DNA of 62,867 nucleotides, filler included, from Octopus bimaculoides (Eukaryota), in the NCBI RefSeq assembly GCF_001194135.2. It is 6 parts of 5 records of this genome, joined end to end, with 100 filler letters (N's around TTAATTAATTAA, not from the genome) between each part and the next. Parts side by side here need not be neighbours in the genome. Positions count along the whole stretch, not along the records: positions 46,164 to 53,516 come from NC_069003.1; 5 more parts are not named here. One strand, given 5' to 3'. The translations under genes and the position numbers were made by a program. Shown here piece after piece: positions 46,164 to 53,516 of this stretch. The notes under the pieces are model-generated. The model searched no databases, had not been told where the DNA came from, and saw only the letters and a program-made list of their open reading frames with translations. Every line of letters starts with the position of its first letter. Positions within the stretch are counted from its first letter, which is position 1.

Positions 46164-47079
46164 TTTCGACACACACACACACACACACTCACTACTGGCG
46201 GGCTGGAACACACTCGCACAGACGGGATGGCACAACGTGAGACATAAGGTATTCGCTATTCACTCGTCATACGCCCCACTAACCCACAATTCCAACCACC
46301 GCCTCACACCGTCCTTGAAATATTTATGGTTCTACAAAAAAAAAAAAGAAAAAAGAACCTTTTCTAATTTCGACACACACACACACACACACGCACACGC
46401 ACACGCACAGTCTTCGTTGTCGTCCTCAAAGCAAAATAAGGCGGAGAAACCGGTCAGCTGAAATAGGTTTCTTGGTCAGTCTCGATGAATAAGAGATCTT
46501 CATGGCTTAAAGATCAGAAATAAAACCTTTCATTGAAAATTGCTTAATGAGATACTCGTCGTCTTAGTTAATGTGAATTTTAAATGAGCTTCGGTTGGGT
46601 GCCGGGTAAAGTGCGTCGTAACGTTAAGGTTTTTTGCATTCTTGTGTTCAATTTCTATTAGGCTGTGGCCATTTAATCATTCCGAGGTCCTCGATCGGTT
46701 GTTGGCGTTGCTATACAGCCCTAGGTCTGTCCTGATTGAGAAGACTTTTGATCCAATTTTCACTCACACACACACAACTATTAAATCAGGCCCTAAAACA
46801 ATGTTTCTCACACCATTTTTTACCTATAGTTCCCTTTGATACTAATTTTACTTGGTTGGACTTTCATAGCCATTCGATGTTTAAGAAATCCCCTTATATT
46901 TTTATAATTGAGTATAATTAGGAATTGTATTAAAATAAAATGATAAATTTATTGCCCTTAAACTTTAACAACAAAATCTTATATACGGACCTCCAAAGGT
47001 CATATGAACCCTCCCAAGGTCGTCTGGACCCCTCACTATTTAATGTCTTTTCCAGTTTCGTTATTATTAAGGGCACTGG

Positions 47080-47345
47080 GGTTCGATGTAATCGACCATG
47101 CTCCCCACAACAAAAAAATTTCAGGTCACGTGCCGAAAGTAGAAAGGATTAAGGCGGCGAGCTGGCAGAATCGTTAGCACGCCGAATTAAATGCTTAGTG
47201 GCATTTCTTTCGGCTTTGTATTCTGAGTACAAATAACACCAAAGTCGACTTAGCCTTTCACCCTTTCAGAATCGATGGAATTTACTAGTCCCCCCTCTAC
47301 CTTTCTCCCAAAATTTCATGCTTTATGCCTATAGTAGAAAATATG
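47080..47345 (+). mobile_element. SINE family C (3' fragment then deleted full copy)
   Basis: AAGGCGGCGAGCTGGCAGAATCGTTAGCACGCC at about 47152. Confidence 0.85.
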
Positions 47346-48617
47346 TTTATTATATATTGGTGGCGTGTGACTTGAGGGAGATTTGGCTGGTATTTTTTAG
47401 CAGGCTGAGGATCATGCGCAGGTTAGCTCGTTATATGCTTGGAGTTATTTTATCAACTGCACATAGCTCCAACGACAATATGTGGACTTGCAGTAATGAT
47501 ATAAAATCTTTATTGCATATCATATAGGGTTTGAGTTGCAGACGACAGACCATAAGACAGCCACTAAAATGTGGTATTTGTTACAGCTCTTTACAGTGAG
47601 TTCAAATCCCGCCTAGGCCGTCTTCCGAGGTCGACTATGAAACATATACAGTACGTGTGTGTACATCATGGTAAGCAACACTTCGCGCTCGTTTAAAAAA
47701 TGTGCGACGTTGTACCTATCCTGCATTTCATTCAAGCAGTCCTGAGCTCAATTTCCACCAGGGTTGTTAAATTTACCTTTCTTCAACCCGGGGTCCATAT
47801 AATAAGGTTTTACTGGGCCTTAAACAGCAGTATCGACTAAAACCCCTTAAGGTGGTGGTCCAGCGTGGCCGCAGTTAAATGACTGAAACGGGAAAATATA
47901 TATATATAAATATAACGTGAGAGAGTTAGGGGTTGGGGGTTCAACCCACTAAGGGATAGTATCTATCCAGTATACTGCTGGGAGGTACCCAATTATTGCT
48001 ACACTAGTGCTATACTAGGTGCAATCAATGGGAGCGGGTAAAATATATATATATATATATATATGATGTGTGTGTGTGTCCAGTTGCGCTTGAACATATT
48101 GCAGCTTTAGTTCACGTGAACGGATTCACAACACCTCAACGGGTTATCGGTTCTTCTACGATTTTATGCCGATGTGAAGAAAAGACCTCAAAAATTCCAC
48201 ATAAACAACAATATGGAATCTTTTTACCTCAAGTAACTTCGGCGGCTATTCCCGTCACCAGCCACAAATAAATAATGTGTGTGCGTGTGCGTGTGCGTGT
48301 GCGTGTGCGTGTGCGTGTGCGTGTGCGTGTGTTACTATGTGTTCTCTAGTCAGATCAAGTATGTTCACAGTATTATCATCATCATCATCATTTAATGTGA
48401 AACTAGTTGAATTCCTTTTATATATTTTCTTATTCTCCCACTTCAAACTTTCCCTTTACTCCTCCTCCTCCAAATATGCAATAACACATTTCTGAATAAT
48501 AATAATAATAATAATAACAACATACTTTGGACTTTCTTTGTTATATATTTAGGATCAACATGTGCTTTCTAATGTCGTTCACAGCGCCAATACACACGCC
48601 ATCGCGCACATATATAT

Positions 48618-48985
48618 GTGCAGGCGTGGCTGTGTAGTAGGAGACCTGCTGGGTTCAGTCCTACTACGTGGCACCTAAGGCAACTGTCGCCTACTACAGC
48701 CTCGGGCCGACCAAAGCCTTGTGAGTGGATTTGATAGACGGAAACTGAAAGAAGCCCGTCATATTATATATATATATATTCTTTTATTCTTTTCAGTCAT
48801 TTGGCTGCGGCCATGCTGGAGCACCGCCTTTAGTCGAACAAATCGACCCCGGAACTTATTCTTTGTAAGCCTAGTACTTATTCTATTGGTTTCTTTTGCC
48901 GAACCGCTAAGTTATGGGGACGTAAACACACCAGCATCGGTTGTCAAGCGATGTTGGGTGGGAGTGACACACACACACACACACA
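48618..48985. mobile_element. SINE module A (+, 48618-48765) joined to module B in inverted orientation (-, 48781-48985)
   Basis: The second part is the reverse complement of module B, including its (TG)n linker. Confidence 0.85.
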
Positions 48986-49214
48986 NNNNNNNNNNNNNNN
49001 NNNNNNNNNNNNNNNNNNNNNNNNNNNNNNNNNNNNNNNNNNNNNNNNNNNNNNNNNGTACTAAGGTACGGAAACGTAAACAAACAATCACCTCAGGACC
49101 TCAACGTAGCAAGATACTATTGATCTCTGCTATGGTGCTGAGTACTCTTAAATCTTTATTACAGGCACGAAGGCCTCATTACGTGCTGAGTACTCTTTTC
49201 CCAACATCCGGCAA

Positions 49215-49895
49215 CTGAAAGGATGAAAGGCGAAGTCGACCTCGGCGGAATATGAACTCAGAACGTAAAGACAGACGAAATACCGCTAAGGATTTCGCCC
49301 AGCGTGCTAACGTTTCTTTATTGCCCACCAACGATTCTGCTTATAAAAATTCTTTTATATTCTGCTAATAAAAATTCTTTTATTGGCCACAAGGGATCAC
49401 ATACAAAACATTAACATACAACATAAAAGACAAAAATAGGACGATACCATGGGTTTTCGCGTGTACACAATGTAATAACAAAAATTGAACAAATTAAAAC
49501 CCCCCAATAGAGTCCAAAGAGCAGAGTTTCTGTCTTTAGCCCTTTAATAATAATAATTCTTTCTACTACAGGCACAAGGCTTGAAATTTTTGGGGAGGGG
49601 ACTAGTGGAATGTGAACTCGCAGCGTAGCGACGGACGAAATGCCGCTAAGCAATTTCGTCCAGCCTGCAAACATTTCTGCCAGCTTTTTTCCTAAATAAT
49701 AATAATAATCTTTTCTACTAAAGGCACAATGCCTGGAATTTGGGGGGAGGGGACCAGTCATTTACATGGACCCCAGTGTTTCACTGGTATTTAATTTATC
49801 AACTCCAAAAGGATAAATGGCAAGTCGATCCCGGTGGAACTTAAAGCTCAGAACGTAAAGCCGGACGAAATACCGTTCAGCCTTTTGTCCGGAGC
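49215..49895 (-). mobile_element. Three SINE family C copies just upstream of the trunk-like exon
   Basis: Reverse-complement matches at about 49215-49315, 49555-49690 and 49710-49895. Confidence 0.8.
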
Positions 49896-50000
49896 ATAAA
49901 AATAATAATTGTAAGAATAATAATAATAATTGTTGTAATAATATTGTTATAATTAAATGAAAGTTTTGTTAAAATTATATTTTAATTAATATATTAATAT

Positions 50001-50027
50001 ATTTTTTCTTTTTTTGTCTCCTTGCAG
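50001..50027 (+). promoter_or_regulatory. 3' splice acceptor immediately before the ATG
   Basis: Polypyrimidine tract ATTTTTTCTTTTTTTGTCTCCTTGCAG|ATG; AG at 50026-50027. Confidence 0.8.
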
Positions 50028-51332
50028 ATGCGATATCTCACACAGTCTCTAATGTTCAGAGTGATACTCTGTCTTATTCTCATACCAACTATCTTAGCTT
50101 ATCCGAAACCGATACTCGTGGAAAAGGCTAACCAGACGATCGTAGTGTTCCATACGGCTCCGTGTCGTCCGTTATCAAGGGACCAACTCCGAAGCCAGCT
50201 GGGAGAGGCTTACGACAAAGGCCGAATGGCTGAGGACGAACAAACGGTGAAGCGAAGCATTGAAGCGGCGACTTCGAACCCTCGTCGAGAAGAACAGTTG
50301 AATGATGCTGACATAGATGATGGTTACTTAAGTGACCAACCTATGAGCAGAAGACGACGTAACTATGGTGATACGGAATTTGGTAGACAAAAATATGACG
50401 ACGACGACGACTATGAAGAAAATGAATACGATGGTGATGACAGTGATTTAGGAGACGAAGACGACGATAGTGATGATGATGATGATCGTGATTACCATGA
50501 CGACGATGATGAGACATTTGATGATAACGATGAAGACGATGATAGTGATGATGATGATGATGATGATGATGGGTTTAAGGATGAAGACGACGATGGCAAT
50601 TTTAAACGTAATAATAATGGTAGAAAGAAAAATAGGAGGAAAACTGGTTCGAACAAGAATGGGCGTCGTCGCCACCGACGCAGGAATCAAAGGATTAGAA
50701 ATTTAGGTGGCGGCAAAATTCGTCGGAAAAGCAGACGAGAACATCTCACGTCTAAACGGCGACATTTTTATTCACAGATCAATCACAAATTGAAACCTCG
50801 CAAAAACAAAAGCAGACTTTCAGCAGATGCCCGCAAAAAGTCCCCCTATCTTAGATCGGGTCTTGTTCGTGGCAAGAGAGACGTCGGCAAATTGAACAAA
50901 CGAAACCAAACTAGAAAAACTGGTCCTTATATCAAAGTAACCATTTCAGTCAAACATCGAGGGCGACAGTTACAGCGTCACAAACGAACTGGTCGTGCAG
51001 CTGAAATGTCAGCCAATTGGCAGTGTGAAATGGAGACCGACTGGAAACGAATGGACGATGGATATTTTCCGCCATATTTACAAACTGGAAAGTGTAAATC
51101 AAAGTCTTGCTTCTTTGATTTCTACAGATGTATTCCCAAAAGATATACGATAAAAGTTCTCAAAAGAGATCCCTTCCGCTGTAACCCAATCCCCACGTTC
51201 GGACAAAACACCACTTACGAAGAAAAATGGATATTTGACAAATATCACGTGACTGTTTGTTGCCAATGTGGTAAAGCGAGACTGAGGACATCGAGACGCC
51301 GTCAAAGCAATCGGCGGTCAAGACCACGTTGA
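50028..51332 (+). CDS. trunk: Trunk/PTTH-family (Noggin-related) secreted cystine-knot growth factor precursor, 434 aa
   Basis: Signal peptide MRYLTQSLMFRVILCLILIPTILA. Prodomain motif CRPLSRDQLRSQLGEAYDKGRM (Trunk C..LS...L...LG.AF...M). Furin site RHKR. C-terminal WQC-x5-W...YFPPYLQTGKC...SCFFDFYRCIPKRYTIKVLKR...C...WIFDKYHVTVCCQC with 8 Cys in Trunk spacing (comparison to insect Trunk from memory). High CpG, varied codons, no stops. Confidence 0.9.
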   Translation: MRYLTQSLMFRVILCLILIPTILAYPKPILVEKANQTIVVFHTAPCRPLSRDQLRSQLGEAYDKGRMAEDEQTVKRSIEAATSNPRREEQLNDADIDDGYLSDQPMSRRRRNYGDTEFGRQKYDDDDDYEENEYDGDDSDLGDEDDDSDDDDDRDYHDDDDETFDDNDEDDDSDDDDDDDDGFKDEDDDGNFKRNNNGRKKNRRKTGSNKNGRRRHRRRNQRIRNLGGGKIRRKSRREHLTSKRRHFYSQINHKLKPRKNKSRLSADARKKSPYLRSGLVRGKRDVGKLNKRNQTRKTGPYIKVTISVKHRGRQLQRHKRTGRAAEMSANWQCEMETDWKRMDDGYFPPYLQTGKCKSKSCFFDFYRCIPKRYTIKVLKRDPFRCNPIPTFGQNTTYEEKWIFDKYHVTVCCQCGKARLRTSRRRQSNRRSRPR

Positions 51333-52124
51333 TGTAACGTCTGTTTTATTACTACTTTCTATTATTTTGCAACATTTATTAAAATGTAATGTTGCCCCGG
51401 GTTTTTTTATTAATTTAAAAAATATATATATACCAAAAAGCAAGCATACCAAATTTAAATAATTTAAAGAAAACAAGGATATGTGTGTGTGTATGTGTGT
51501 GTCTGTATATAAACACTGTGTGAATGGAAATAGATACATATATGTATGTATGTATGTATGTATATTTGTGACAGAAACGGATTGACAGTTGTATAGCGAC
51601 AAGGGGGATAAGGGCGAGAGAAAAGCTTTGAATGTGATGCAAGTGAAACGGAATTGGGCAGAAGACGGTTTGTGATTGTACATAAGCGTCGTGCCTAGAA
51701 ACGTTACATTTGAGTTATTCTTCTTGACATTGGAGAAGAAAACAGGGGACTTAGATCGCAACACAACACTCACAAATGCGGCGCGCGATGGCACACATTT
51801 ATGCGTGTGTGTACGCATGCATATATGCGTGTACATATGTGTCTATTTCTGTTTGTTTGCAATTACACTTTTATATTTAAATACATACAGATGCGTACAT
51901 ATGTATGCATGTGTGTACACAAATGTGTTAATATATATATTATGTATATATAATGTATGTATGTATATATACACGCACCGTTAGACTTATAAATATGTGA
52001 ACTGTAGTGTTTTTCTTTTTAATTGCGTATATGTGACCAAGTGTTTGTACGTATGTGTGTGTGTGTGTATGCAATATATTTATAATGTATTTATACTTAA
52101 ATGTAATGACTGAAAATGGTGTAA

Positions 52125-52130
52125 AATAAA
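52125..52130 (+). terminator. Candidate polyadenylation signal for the trunk-like mRNA (alternative ATTAAA at 51378-51383)
   Basis: AATAAA hexamer 0.8 kb after the stop; no transcript evidence available. Confidence 0.3.
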
Positions 52131-52236
52131 AAGCGTGGCTCGAGAAATATTAACGAAACATAACAGCAAAACAACTAGCATGACCGGAAGACAGTAACCA
52201 GGGTAATACACCAGACTGAGAGCCTCGTAAAATACA

Positions 52237-52278
<42 letters not shown>

Positions 52279-52288
52279 NNNNNNNNNN

Positions 52289-52330
<42 letters not shown>

Positions 52331-52804
52331 GTTGTGGCTATGATAAGCCAGACGACAGCAGTCACAGTGTGTGTGTGATCATGACGGCGGTTCGAGATTT
52401 CGCTTGTTGATTTCTTAACGCCAAATGTCTCCCAATAAAGACAACAATACCTTTTGACATTGTCAAGAGACTTGCTTTGAAACACAGACATATAGCGCCA
52501 CAATTATCATGTTATATTTTACCTTATTATAGTAGTTACCGACACACATATGTCTGCATATATATTTACGTATATATGTATATATATGTATGTATATGTA
52601 TGTATAGAACATACATACATCGACACCTAAGTACAGTTATGTGTTTGTGTGAGAGCGAGAGAAAGAATGAGATTCTGTGTGTACGTCTGTATTTATGTAT
52701 GTATGAATGTATGTATTTATATATATGAATGTTTATATAGGAATATAGGCCGTTGGATGGATTGAAGATAATTAATGGAGTGTATATAAATATATGTGCC
52801 TGGA

Positions 52805-52886
<82 letters not shown>

Positions 52887-53382
52887 AGATTCATTGTTTG
52901 TCTGCGCATGTAATAGCATTTCTGTGTACTTACGTATAATCATGTAAATAGATAAGAATGTATGCGTGAAAAGAGGTGGCAGATTGCTAAATGAAAGGAA
53001 ACACATTTAAGACATACGTTACCACATAAAAATGAAATACAAAATATACAATACAAAATAACATGTTTATAACGGAGTTGTAGTTGACTCCCATTTGTGA
53101 TAAAAAAAAAATGCCGTAATTATTAATAATAGCAGACTTCAAGATACGTACATATATATATATATATGTATGTATGTATATACGATGTATGTACGCAATT
53201 CTTTTTAAAGAAAAGAAACGAGCAAATATATATATATAAAAAAAGACGTATACGAATGTCAAAGAAAAAAAAAGACGATAATGAACATATATACACACAA
53301 TTTGTGGATTAACAAGGCAAGCAATGGTTTCATGTGGAAAACGTCTCCACAGTTGTTCAGGCTTACGACGTTCGATACTAGC

Positions 53383-53432
<50 letters not shown>

Positions 53433-53516
53433 CAAAGAATAAAATATGAAACAACGTATGACTTATTTTGAGAATTATATATGAAAGAAAATGCGTTTCA
53501 ATATCCTAAAGTGGAA

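What the first reader, a model, noticed from the sequence alone, without database searches (positions are those of the whole stretch)
50028..51332. Cephalopod-type Trunk/PTTH-family ligand: a Torso-pathway hormone outside arthropods
Seen: signal peptide, conserved prodomain motif, RHKR site (50976-50987) and a 114-aa C-terminal product with 8 Cys ending CCQC. Established: in insects, Trunk (embryonic terminal patterning) and PTTH (moulting neurohormone) are cystine-knot ligands of the Torso RTK; Trunk needs proteolytic processing, and the MACPF protein Torso-like acts in the pathway. Trunk-like genes have been found by homology outside arthropods, but I know of no function assigned in molluscs. 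Inference: this locus encodes the ligand of an uncharacterised developmental or neuroendocrine signalling system in an animal that neither moults nor patterns like a fly. At 434 aa it is about twice the length of insect Trunk as I recall it.
Basis: partly seen in the sequence, partly recalled or inferred. Interest (0 to 1): 0.85.

Follow-up and report, generated by a model that had tools for sequence, protein, structure and literature searches.

The report
Octopus Trunk-family cystine-knot ligand gene
This is a real octopus gene for a secreted growth-factor-like protein related to the insect signals Trunk and PTTH, but the same protein was already listed as a cephalopod Trunk in a 2019 study, so it is a known kind of gene whose function and receptor in octopus remain untested.

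Summary
Window 50028-51332 (+) is an intact 434-codon reading frame. It has a hydrophobic signal sequence, a conserved prodomain motif, an RHKR site at exactly 50976-50987, and a 114-residue C-terminal piece with 8 cysteines.

The locus is Octopus bimaculoides LOC106874022, which RefSeq calls "uncharacterized protein". Residues 322-428 are 100% identical to "octopusVulgaris.40845 ... PTTH/TRUNK" in the source data of De Oliveira et al. 2019 (eLife). The cephalopod Trunk-family ligand is therefore already catalogued, and it came from a transcriptome, so it is expressed.

The family assignment is supported by sequence, profile and fold evidence. The knot domain scores 155 bits on a spiralian subgroup I call T1, 77 bits on canonical Trunk, 48 bits on PTTH, and human Noggin scores only 18 bits on T1. 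The AlphaFold model (pLDDT 89.7) matches IL-17, Noggin and PTTH knots.

Two refinements:
- The gene belongs to T1, a paralogue of canonical Trunk rather than its orthologue. Chitons and Lingula carry both types.
- The extra length is a low-complexity acidic and basic linker.

The Torso link is inference only. The 2019 screen recovered no cephalopod Torso, and I could not test for one here.

Novelty: already known. Interest: low to moderate.

The parts
50002..50027 (+). Polypyrimidine tract plus AG: the 3' splice acceptor that immediately precedes the ATG
   Evidence: The sequence reads ttttttctttttttgtctccttgcag|ATG. The RefSeq protein XP_052831940.1 has 9 extra N-terminal residues (MSRSWPLTQ) that are not encoded anywhere in the piece, so they come from an upstream exon.
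50028..51332 (+). Main coding exon: 434 codons plus stop, encoding the prepro form of a Trunk-family ligand
   Evidence: It is 100% identical to the cluster that contains XP_052831940.1.
50028..50102 (+). Signal peptide (about residues 1-25), with likely cleavage after ILA before YPKP
   Evidence: The hydrophobic core at residues 8-24 has a Kyte-Doolittle mean of 2.55. Homologues align at the same place, at TVLA/FP and TVFA/FP. No dedicated predictor was run.
50163..50228 (+). Conserved prodomain motif C-x-P-x-S-x3-L-x3-(L/M)-G-x-A-(F/Y)-(D/N)-x2-(R/K)-M (residues 46-67)
   Evidence: Alignments A1 and A4. The motif is shared with Drosophila and Tribolium Trunk and with amphioxus. A profile of the motif finds only Noggin residues 35-59 in the PDB (E = 0.0089).
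50250..50255 (+). Conserved dibasic site K75-R76, followed by Ser (VKR|S)
   Evidence: KR(S/T) is present in 7 of 9 T1 sequences in A4. Drosophila Trunk K75-R76 (KRSS) is the site critical for cleavage and function (PMC4640135).
50358..50597 (+). Acidic low-complexity linker (residues 111-190, 62% D/E), encoded largely by a GAT/GAC trinucleotide array
   Evidence: TRF period 3 at 50471-50571; family D3.
50598..50987 (+). Basic linker (residues 191-320, 39% K/R) holding the R-x-(K/R)-R sites RHRR215, RGKR281 and RHKR317
50976..50987 (+). RHKR: a furin-type site 12 residues before the knot's first Trp
   Evidence: Idiosepius has NRKR in the equivalent place.
51018..51269 (+). Cystine-knot domain (residues 331-414), with 8 Cys ending CCQC
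   Evidence: A profile match to Bombyx PTTH 5AOQ_L (E = 0.00099) aligns six of the octopus cysteines (the predicted knot cysteines) with PTTH cysteines. The AF2 model has pLDDT 89.7. Foldseek matches IL-17, Noggin and PTTH.
51270..51329 (+). Basic C-terminal tail (residues 415-434, 50% K/R)
   Evidence: Basic tails are also present in the other T1 sequences.
51378..51383 (+). ATTAAA, a candidate polyadenylation signal 46 nt after the stop codon
   Evidence: This is a motif match only.

Best explanation
The locus is the main coding exon of Octopus bimaculoides LOC106874022. It encodes a secreted prepro-protein of the Noggin-like/Trunk/PTTH cystine-knot superfamily.

The protein belongs to a spiralian subgroup that I call T1 here. 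T1 includes molluscs, a nemertean, an annelid and a brachiopod. Its nearest relative is canonical Trunk.

Shown:
- The domain architecture: signal peptide, Noggin/Trunk-type N-terminal motif, a conserved KR|S site, a low-complexity acidic then basic linker, RHKR, an 8-Cys knot and a basic tail.
- Homology to Trunk and PTTH, and a confidently predicted knot fold.
- Identity of the mature peptide to a transcript-derived, published octopus 'PTTH/TRUNK' sequence.

Inferred:
- After signal-peptide removal, furin-type convertases cut the precursor in the secretory pathway at K75-R76 and/or RHKR320, as shown for Drosophila Trunk.
- This releases a C-terminal knot-bearing fragment that dimerises.
- The fragment acts as an extracellular ligand, most probably for a Torso-type receptor tyrosine kinase driving Ras/ERK.

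Its tissue and role in octopus are unknown.
For: Identity:
- The cluster partner is XP_052831940.1, an uncharacterized protein LOC106874022 of O. bimaculoides.
- Residues 322-428 are identical to octopusVulgaris.40845 'PTTH/TRUNK'.

Family:
- With the knot profile, the best PDB sequence match is Bombyx PTTH in its Torso complex (5AOQ_L, E = 0.00099), and six octopus cysteines (the predicted knot cysteines) align with PTTH cysteines.
- The knot profile finds 364 cluster representatives. These include RefSeq 'protein trunk-like' from Gordionus and 'protein trunk' from Elysia.
- Octopus knot domain HMM scores: T1 154.9 bits, canonical Trunk 77.3, PTTH-like spiralian group 68.0, insect PTTH 47.6.
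- hhalign of T1 against each group: canonical Trunk E = 4e-27, PTTH-like spiralian group 1.6e-23, PTTH 2.4e-14, Noggin 8e-4.
- The T1 split has 80% NJ bootstrap support.

Fold:
- AF2 pLDDT is 89.7 and the model is all-beta.
- Foldseek top hits are IL-17, Noggin 1M4U and PTTH 5AOQ, all at probability 1.0.

Precursor logic:
- The prodomain motif and the KR|S site are conserved with Drosophila Trunk.
- Drosophila Trunk is cut intracellularly by Furin 1/2, and K75-R76 is critical (PMC4640135).

Receptor:
- Trunk and PTTH both act on Torso, and an aphid Noggin-like protein rescues trunk nulls (PMC9071555).
- Torso is present in other molluscs that carry T1, including Lottia, Patinopecten and Leptochiton.
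Against: - No receptor evidence for octopus. The published Torso set has no Octopus, Idiosepius or Nautilus sequence, although those databases were screened. My own attempt to search for one was uninformative.
- The gene is not in the canonical Trunk clade.
- The deep branching order among T1, canonical Trunk and the PTTH-like groups is unresolved on about 89 columns. Support for T1+T2 is at most 12%.
- Cleavage, dimerisation and secretion are inferred from motifs only.
- Pfam has no dedicated model that the octopus protein passes: IL17 scores 19.1 and Noggin 15.1 bits, both below their cut-offs.
Confidence: 0.6

Rival explanations
1. The protein is a Trunk-family ligand that, in cephalopods, uses a receptor other than Torso. 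This could be another RTK or a different receptor class. Torso may have been lost in this lineage while the T1 ligand was kept.
For: No cephalopod Torso appears in the 2019 receptor data, although the O. bimaculoides proteome and three cephalopod transcriptomes were screened, and the bursicon receptor was recovered from O. bimaculoides and Idiosepius. Only the T1 type was recovered from cephalopods, whereas chitons and Lingula have T1 plus canonical Trunk. PTTH is reported to act on GPCRs too (PMC9071555).
Against: Absence from one 2019 screen of an early gene set and short-read transcriptomes is weak evidence. Torso is present in monoplacophoran, chiton, bivalve and gastropod data. I could not search any cephalopod genome here.
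Confidence: 0.2
2. The protein is a Noggin-like extracellular antagonist or modulator. It would bind BMP or other ligands rather than activate a receptor.
For: The prodomain motif profile finds only Noggin in the PDB. Foldseek gives Noggin the highest sequence identity of the structural matches (26%). Bona fide Trunks themselves pass Pfam's Noggin threshold. An aphid Noggin-like protein inhibits BMP without needing its clip (PMC9071555).
Against: The knot domain is far closer to Trunk than to Noggin: 77 bits on canonical Trunk, against 18 bits for human Noggin on T1. Pfam Noggin is below its cut-off, and its alignment does not reach the clip region of the profile. The cysteine pattern is the 8-Cys CCxC of Trunk, not Noggin's CxCxC end. 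Several furin-type sites would separate the N-terminal motif from the knot, which is unlike Noggin.
Confidence: 0.12
3. The long basic linker is the functional part. The precursor would be cut at its many dibasic sites into small peptides, as in a classical neuropeptide polyprotein, and the knot would be secondary.
For: There are 19 KR/RR dipeptides and four R-x-(K/R)-R sites, most of them in residues 191-320.
Against: The linker is low complexity and poorly conserved, and it differs in length among homologues from 290 to 536 aa. Conservation is concentrated in the motif and the knot. There are no repeated peptide units and no Gly-dibasic amidation signals.
Confidence: 0.04
4. The ORF is a chance or decayed reading frame, not a functional gene.
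For: It lies in repeat-rich, gap-containing sequence and carries an internal trinucleotide array.
Against: The frame is intact over 434 codons. The mature region is 100% identical between O. bimaculoides and an O. vulgaris transcript. An orthologue is transcribed in Idiosepius. All knot cysteines and family-invariant residues are kept.
Confidence: 0.02

Closest known systems
Octopus vulgaris contig 40845 and Idiosepius notoides contig 126128, labelled 'PTTH/TRUNK' in De Oliveira et al. 2019 (eLife 8:e46113, Figure 2-source data 1)
   Same: The O. vulgaris peptide (107 aa) is identical to window residues 322-428. The Idiosepius fragment shares the linker end, an RxKR site and the knot.
   Different: The published entries are partial transcripts. 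The window gives the full precursor and the exon structure of the O. bimaculoides gene, which RefSeq still names 'uncharacterized protein'.
Spiralian T1-type Trunk-like precursors, for example Solemya velum 25405, Nucula, chiton 68426/7446, Lottia 1234654, Aplysia 524898990, Lineus 23979, Capitella 210641 and Lingula g10966; probably including the propeptide-bearing type of oyster precursor (Cragi-PTTH3/4)
   Same: The architecture is the same: signal peptide, N-x-S/T-(I/V)-V-(I/V)-F strand, CxP...LG.A(F/Y)D..M motif, KR|S, acidic then basic linker, W-x-C-x-M...FPPY.QTG.C...NP.P...NTTYEE.W...C.C knot and a basic tail. Knot identity is 44-71%.
   Different: The octopus linker is longer than in bivalves: 434 aa against 290-335 aa. 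Octopus keeps the 8-Cys CCxC form, whereas many T1 members have 7 Cys. I could not confirm the match to the oyster genes because their sequences are held only as images.
Drosophila and Tribolium Trunk (canonical Trunk, here T2)
   Same: Both are secreted proproteins with the same N-terminal motif, a KR|S-type site after it, and an 8-Cys knot with an extra Cys pair (C...CCxC). The octopus knot scores 77 bits (E = 2e-25) on the canonical Trunk profile.
   Different: Knot identity is only 27-36%. The octopus gene falls outside the clade that contains Drosophila, Tribolium, amphioxus, chiton 106697 and Lingula g541. Chitons and Lingula have both types, so the two are paralogues. Canonical Trunks pass Pfam's Noggin threshold and the octopus protein does not. 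The octopus protein has no ...DLG..FPR(Y/F)LR... or ...EERAVTFCC signature.
Bombyx PTTH (PDB 5AOQ, in complex with the Torso ectodomain)
   Same: It is the best solved-structure sequence match (E = 0.00099), with aligned knot cysteines. The Foldseek TM-score is 0.61-0.68.
   Different: Identity is about 20-27%. PTTH has the CxC start with an interchain Cys and lacks the extra Cys pair. The octopus knot scores only 47.6 bits on the PTTH profile.
Noggin and arthropod Noggin-like proteins (e.g. pea aphid ApNL2)
   Same: They share the N-terminal LLG..(F/Y)(D/N)P..M motif and the cystine-knot fold. ApNL2 acts as a Torso ligand in flies (PMC9071555).
   Different: No match to the clip region. The C-terminal Cys pattern differs. 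The score is below Pfam's Noggin cut-off. A long processed linker lies between the motif and the knot.

Membership tests
Trunk/PTTH/Noggin-like cystine-knot ligand superfamily | C-terminal cystine-knot domain with the family's cysteine spacing and a significant sequence match to known members | tested here: met
   The profile matches Bombyx PTTH 5AOQ_L at E = 0.00099 with aligned cysteines. The octopus knot scores 77.3 bits on the canonical Trunk profile and 47.6 bits on PTTH. Named 'protein trunk' and 'trunk-like' records are among the profile hits.
Trunk/PTTH/Noggin-like cystine-knot ligand superfamily | Cystine-knot growth-factor fold | tested here: met
   The AF2 model has pLDDT 89.7 and four long beta elements. 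Foldseek hits IL-17, Noggin 1M4U_A and PTTH 5AOQ_L at probability 1.0 and E = 2e-3 to 1e-2. The fold alone does not separate these families.
Trunk/PTTH/Noggin-like cystine-knot ligand superfamily | Secreted precursor: N-terminal signal peptide | tested here: met
   Residues 8-24 form a hydrophobic core (Kyte-Doolittle mean 2.55), followed by ILA|YP, and this aligns with the signal regions of homologues. This is sequence inspection only; no SignalP-type tool was available.
Trunk (as a processed proprotein) | N-terminal L...(L/M)G.A(F/Y)(N/D)..(R/Y)M motif followed by a dibasic convertase site, plus basic sites before the knot | tested here: met
   Alignment A4 with Drosophila, Tribolium and amphioxus Trunk. 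The sites are KR75-76|S, RRRR108, RHRR215, RGKR281 and RHKR317. Drosophila K75-R76 is critical for furin cleavage. Actual cleavage was not tested.
Canonical Trunk (orthologue of Drosophila trk) | Falls in the clade that holds Drosophila and Tribolium Trunk, amphioxus Trunk and the chiton and brachiopod canonical copies | tested here: not met
   The gene groups in the separate spiralian clade T1, an 80% bootstrap split. It scores 154.9 bits on T1 against 77.3 bits on canonical Trunk. Acanthochitona and Lingula carry both types.
Trunk/PTTH (functional definition) | Binds and activates the Torso receptor tyrosine kinase | not testable with these tools
A search for an octopus Torso also failed: the E-value cut-off was set too strictly, and no cephalopod genome was available.
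Insect PTTH | PTTH clade membership and the C-x-C start, with an extra Cys for the interchain disulfide | tested here: not met
   The octopus sequence starts W-Q-C, with no Cys two residues upstream (alignment). PTTH gives the lowest score of the four profiles (47.6 bits).
Canonical Noggin (Pfam PF05806) | Score at or above Pfam's gathering cut-off, the Noggin 9-Cys pattern ending CxCxC, and an N-terminal clip | tested here: not met
   The score is 11.1 bits for the full protein and 15.1 bits for the mature domain, against a cut-off of 24.1. The alignment covers profile positions 104-210 only. The C-terminus is CCQC plus a basic tail. Human Noggin scores 18.3 bits on T1. Only the short motif after the clip is shared.
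Interleukin-17 (Pfam PF06083) | Score at or above Pfam's gathering cut-off | tested here: not met
   The score is 19.1 bits against a cut-off of 24. The structural similarity is at the level of the shared knot fold, with 15-18% identity.

The most novel reading that the evidence does not exclude
Cephalopods have kept only the spiralian T1 Trunk-like ligand and have lost both canonical Trunk and Torso. The knot protein would then signal through a different, unidentified receptor, or act as an extracellular antagonist. That would be a case of a conserved ligand outliving its ancestral receptor.
Probability: 0.15. Interest if true: 0.6.

Novelty: already known. Interest (0 to 1): 0.25.

Why it matters
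Trunk and Torso genes outside arthropods have been documented since 2013-2019, so the existence of this gene changes nothing in the field.

What remains open is function. No Trunk-family ligand has a demonstrated role or receptor in any mollusc.

This report adds three practical points:
- RefSeq's "uncharacterized protein LOC106874022" can be annotated as the octopus Trunk-like (T1) precursor, with its full precursor structure.
- Lophotrochozoan "Trunk" is at least three paralogue groups, and the octopus gene is not the fly orthologue. This matters for anyone designing rescue or receptor-pairing experiments.
- The published receptor survey lacks a cephalopod Torso. That gap is easy to check in current chromosome-level cephalopod genomes, and if it proves real it would make the ligand an orphan worth de-orphanising.

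Tried and rejected
1. The search for homologous proteins with the 4-sequence knot alignment A2 returned nothing, not even its own members. I treated this as a tool quirk, because the same alignment worked in the PDB and representatives searches.

2. My last homologue search used the full-length Laevipilina Torso from the 2019 supplement to look for an octopus Torso. I set the E-value limit at 1e-40. Only a Trichinella insulin receptor was returned, so the search says nothing about octopus.

3. The look-up of encoding contigs for the window protein found no record.

4. Literature searches for LOC106874022 and for 'receptor torso' with 'octopus' found nothing. Skelly et al. 2019 (Torso activation cassette) is cited by others but is not held in the library.

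5. The oyster Cragi-PTTH1-4 sequences are images in the supplement, so I could not place them relative to the octopus gene.

6. A first bootstrap run timed out. Biopython's get_support gave unreliable numbers on arbitrarily rooted NJ trees. I replaced both with explicit split counting.

7. Rfam and tRNA scans of the piece found nothing.

8. I considered IL-17 and canonical Noggin membership and rejected both on Pfam cut-offs, cysteine pattern and profile scores.

9. I looked for the upstream exon encoding MSRSWPLTQ in all six frames of the piece and did not find it.
Full report
**What is there.** The piece (46164-53516) is AT-rich, repeat-laden eukaryotic sequence with two short assembly gaps. 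Its one long reading frame is 50028-51332 (+), 434 codons. The ATG sits directly after a polypyrimidine tract and AG, with in-frame stops upstream. This is therefore an internal exon whose first ATG starts, or nearly starts, the protein.

An exact look-up shows that the product is in the same 90% cluster as XP_052831940.1, "uncharacterized protein LOC106874022 [Octopus bimaculoides]". That record carries nine more N-terminal residues (MSRSWPLTQ). These residues are not encoded anywhere in the piece, so they come from an exon more than 3.8 kb upstream or from a gap.

Every stated element is present at the stated place:
- A hydrophobic signal-like N-terminus, residues 8-24.
- A conserved prodomain motif, C46 to M67.
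- RHKR at residues 317-320, which is nt 50976-50987.
- A 114-residue C-terminal piece with eight cysteines.

The only slip is "ending CCQC". CCQC is at residues 411-414 and is followed by a 20-residue tail that is half Lys/Arg.

The "twice insect Trunk" remark is also right: 434 aa against 235 aa for Drosophila and 212 aa for Tribolium. The excess is a linker that is 62% Asp/Glu (residues 111-190, partly a GAT/GAC trinucleotide array) and then 39% Lys/Arg (residues 191-320). Similar acidic and basic linkers occur in the Aplysia, scallop and chiton relatives, so the linker is a trait of the subgroup and not peculiar to octopus.

**Relatives.**
- A word-seeded search found only three distant homologues: a Solemya velum hypothetical protein and two unnamed assemblies, at E = 8e-53 to 2e-41. 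They align at the N-terminal motif and the whole knot.
- An exhaustive HMMER search with the knot alignment found 364 cluster representatives at E <= 1e-3 and 190 at E <= 1e-10.
- Named members include uncharacterised proteins of Patella and Potamilus, "protein trunk-like" of the nematomorph Gordionus, and "protein trunk" of the sea slug Elysia.
- Against solved structures, the best and only meaningful sequence match is Bombyx PTTH from its complex with Torso (5AOQ_L). The E-value is 0.079 with the single sequence and 0.00099 with the profile, and six octopus cysteines (the predicted knot cysteines) align with PTTH cysteines. Noggin was not hit.
- Pfam gives only sub-threshold IL17 (19.1 bits) and Noggin (15.1 bits) matches.

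**Already published.** De Oliveira et al. 2019 (eLife 8:e46113) state that Trunk had been found in arthropods, annelids, molluscs and amphioxus (Jekely 2013), and they extend it to many more phyla and to a ctenophore. A companion paper lists Trunk among mollusc prohormones.

Their Figure 2-source data 1 contains ">octopusVulgaris.40845 MolluscaCephalopoda PTTH/TRUNK". Its 107 residues are identical to window residues 322-428. The file also holds a partial Idiosepius orthologue. The O. vulgaris entry derives from transcriptome run SRR331946, so the gene is transcribed.

An oyster study describes four Trunk/PTTH-like precursors of two architectures, with expression profiles but no function.

**Placement inside the family.** I took labelled knot domains from that supplement (Drosophila and Tribolium Trunk and PTTH, Bombyx PTTH, amphioxus, many lophotrochozoans). 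I added human Noggin, whose sequence I recalled and then verified against 1M4U_A. From these I built an alignment and NJ trees.

Lophotrochozoan sequences fall into three types:
- **T1** includes octopus, Idiosepius, chitons, protobranch and pteriomorph bivalves, Lottia, Aplysia, a scaphopod, Lineus, Capitella and Lingula g10966. It forms a split with 80% bootstrap support.
- **T2** holds Drosophila and Tribolium Trunk, amphioxus, an onychophoran, a bryozoan, chiton 106697 and Lingula g541.
- **T3** is a short PTTH-like type.

Acanthochitona and Lingula have both T1 and T2, so these are paralogues and the octopus gene is not the fly trunk orthologue.

Profile scores agree:
- The octopus knot scores 154.9 bits on T1 (built without the cephalopods), 77.3 on T2, 68.0 on T3 and 47.6 on insect PTTH.
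- Human Noggin scores 18.3 bits on T1.
- hhalign ranks T2 as T1's nearest profile (E = 4e-27), then T3 (1.6e-23), PTTH (2.4e-14) and Noggin (8e-4).

The deeper branching order is not resolved on about 89 columns; support for T1+T2 is at most 12%.

Octopus shares with T2 the eight-cysteine pattern with an extra pair (C385 and the first C of CCxC). Among the 162 domain sequences extracted from all proteins fetched up to that point, T1 and T2 types together, the 7-Cys form was commonest (100) and 45 had 8 Cys with CCxC; by eye most of the 7-Cys forms are T1 members.

**Fold.** An AlphaFold2 model of the mature domain, built with 51 aligned relatives, is confident (mean pLDDT 89.7) and consists of long paired strands. 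Foldseek against the PDB returns cystine-knot cytokines only: IL-17A/F/25, Noggin (1M4U_A, 26% identity) and PTTH (5AOQ_L, TM up to 0.68). All are at probability 1.0 and E = 2e-3 to 1e-2. The fold confirms the knot superfamily but does not discriminate within it.

**The prodomain motif.** The motif C-x-P-x-S-x3-L-x3-(L/M)-G-x-A-(F/Y)-(D/N)-x2-(R/K)-M aligns across T1 and canonical Trunk. A profile of it retrieves a single PDB chain, Noggin residues 35-59 ([25 protein letters not shown], E = 0.0089). Drosophila, Tribolium and amphioxus Trunk pass Pfam's Noggin threshold through an alignment that starts at this motif. The motif is therefore an inherited Noggin/Trunk feature rather than something specific to this gene.

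Eight residues after the motif, octopus has K75-R76-S. KR(S/T) is kept in 7 of 9 T1 sequences. In Drosophila Trunk the K75-R76 (KRSS) site after the same motif is critical for cleavage and function, and cleavage is carried out inside the cell by Furin 1 and 2 (PMC4640135).

Octopus has four further R-x-(K/R)-R sites. The last is RHKR, 12 residues before the knot's first Trp, with NRKR in the same place in Idiosepius.

**Mechanism.** I consider the following the most likely course:
1. Co-translational entry into the ER and signal-peptide removal.
2. Folding of the knot with four intrachain disulfides. Three are the knot bonds by alignment with PTTH, and the fourth is C385-C411 by analogy with canonical Trunk. 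This is inference.
3. Furin-type cleavage at KR76 and/or RHKR320.
4. Secretion of a basic, probably dimeric knot fragment that acts as a receptor ligand.

By homology the receptor would be Torso, signalling through Ras/ERK. Trunk, PTTH and an aphid Noggin-like protein all act through Torso, and Torso is present in molluscs that carry T1.

The weak point is the receptor in cephalopods. The 2019 Torso FASTA, alignment and trees contain no Octopus or Idiosepius entry. Yet the O. bimaculoides proteome and the O. vulgaris, Idiosepius and Nautilus transcriptomes were among the screened databases, and other receptors were recovered from O. bimaculoides and Idiosepius.

I tried to look for an octopus Torso with a full-length monoplacophoran query. 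I set the E-value limit too strictly for the database size and obtained nothing useful. The Torso step is therefore inference (about even odds), while the family assignment and precursor architecture are well supported.

**Rivals.**
- A non-Torso receptor, if Torso really is absent from cephalopods.
- A Noggin-like antagonist role. This is supported only by the shared motif and fold. It is opposed by the Trunk-like knot, the missing clip match and the processing sites.
- A neuropeptide polyprotein role for the basic linker, which is unlikely because the linker is not conserved.
- A non-functional ORF, which is excluded in practice by cross-species identity and transcripts.

**Verdict.** However, the gene is an already catalogued member of a known family. 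Its unusual length is low-complexity linker, and its function in octopus is as unknown as before. The most interesting residue is the unverified absence of Torso, and of canonical Trunk, from cephalopod data.

Noticed in passing
window 47167-47269 (inverted), 49215-49317, 49545-49660, 49697-49890: Several copies of a short interspersed repeat (GGCACAAGGC..TTTGGGGGAGGGG ... CTCAGAACGTAAAG.CGGACGAAATACCG) lie in the intron just upstream of the coding exon. From memory it resembles the abundant cephalopod SINE, but I did not verify this against any repeat library.
   Followed up: partly
window 50400-50618: A GAT/GAC trinucleotide array inside the coding exon encodes the poly-Asp part of the linker. 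Such arrays are prone to length change, which may explain why linker length varies so much among relatives (290-536 aa).
   Followed up: partly
window 48986-49057 and 52279-52288: Runs of N (72 and 10 bases) are assembly gaps within the piece. The first lies in the upstream intron, so a small exon could in principle be hidden there.
   Followed up: no
window 50028 (N-terminus) / XP_052831940.1: The RefSeq model adds MSRSWPLTQ from an exon that is not in the piece. The UniRef entry starts at the window's ATG. Which start is used is unresolved, but either leaves a plausible signal peptide.
   Followed up: partly
related sequences: The 162 fetched domain sequences (T1 and T2 types together) show two cysteine patterns: 45 have 8 Cys with CCxC (octopus, protobranch bivalves, chitons, Lineus, and the canonical Trunk type) and 100 have 7 Cys with (G/A/W)CxC. 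In T1, the 7-Cys forms have an unpaired Cys that might form an interchain bond.
   Followed up: no
De Oliveira et al. 2019 source data, files 3-8: No cephalopod Torso sequence appears in the published receptor set, and only the T1 ligand type was recovered from cephalopods. Chiton and Lingula have T1 plus canonical Trunk, and Lingula also has a PTTH-like copy.
   Followed up: partly
Pfam scan of reference proteins: Drosophila, Tribolium and amphioxus Trunk pass Pfam's Noggin gathering score (31-37 bits). Drosophila PTTH and an oyster PTTH-like protein pass the IL17 score (24.2 and 26.1 bits against 24). Pfam therefore splits this one superfamily between two models and has no Trunk/PTTH model of its own.
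   Followed up: no
window 51400-53516: The 3' flank is dominated by TA, TG and TATG microsatellites, with GC falling to 28%. The long 'ORFs' listed there (up to 172 aa) are artefacts of this low-complexity sequence.
   Followed up: no
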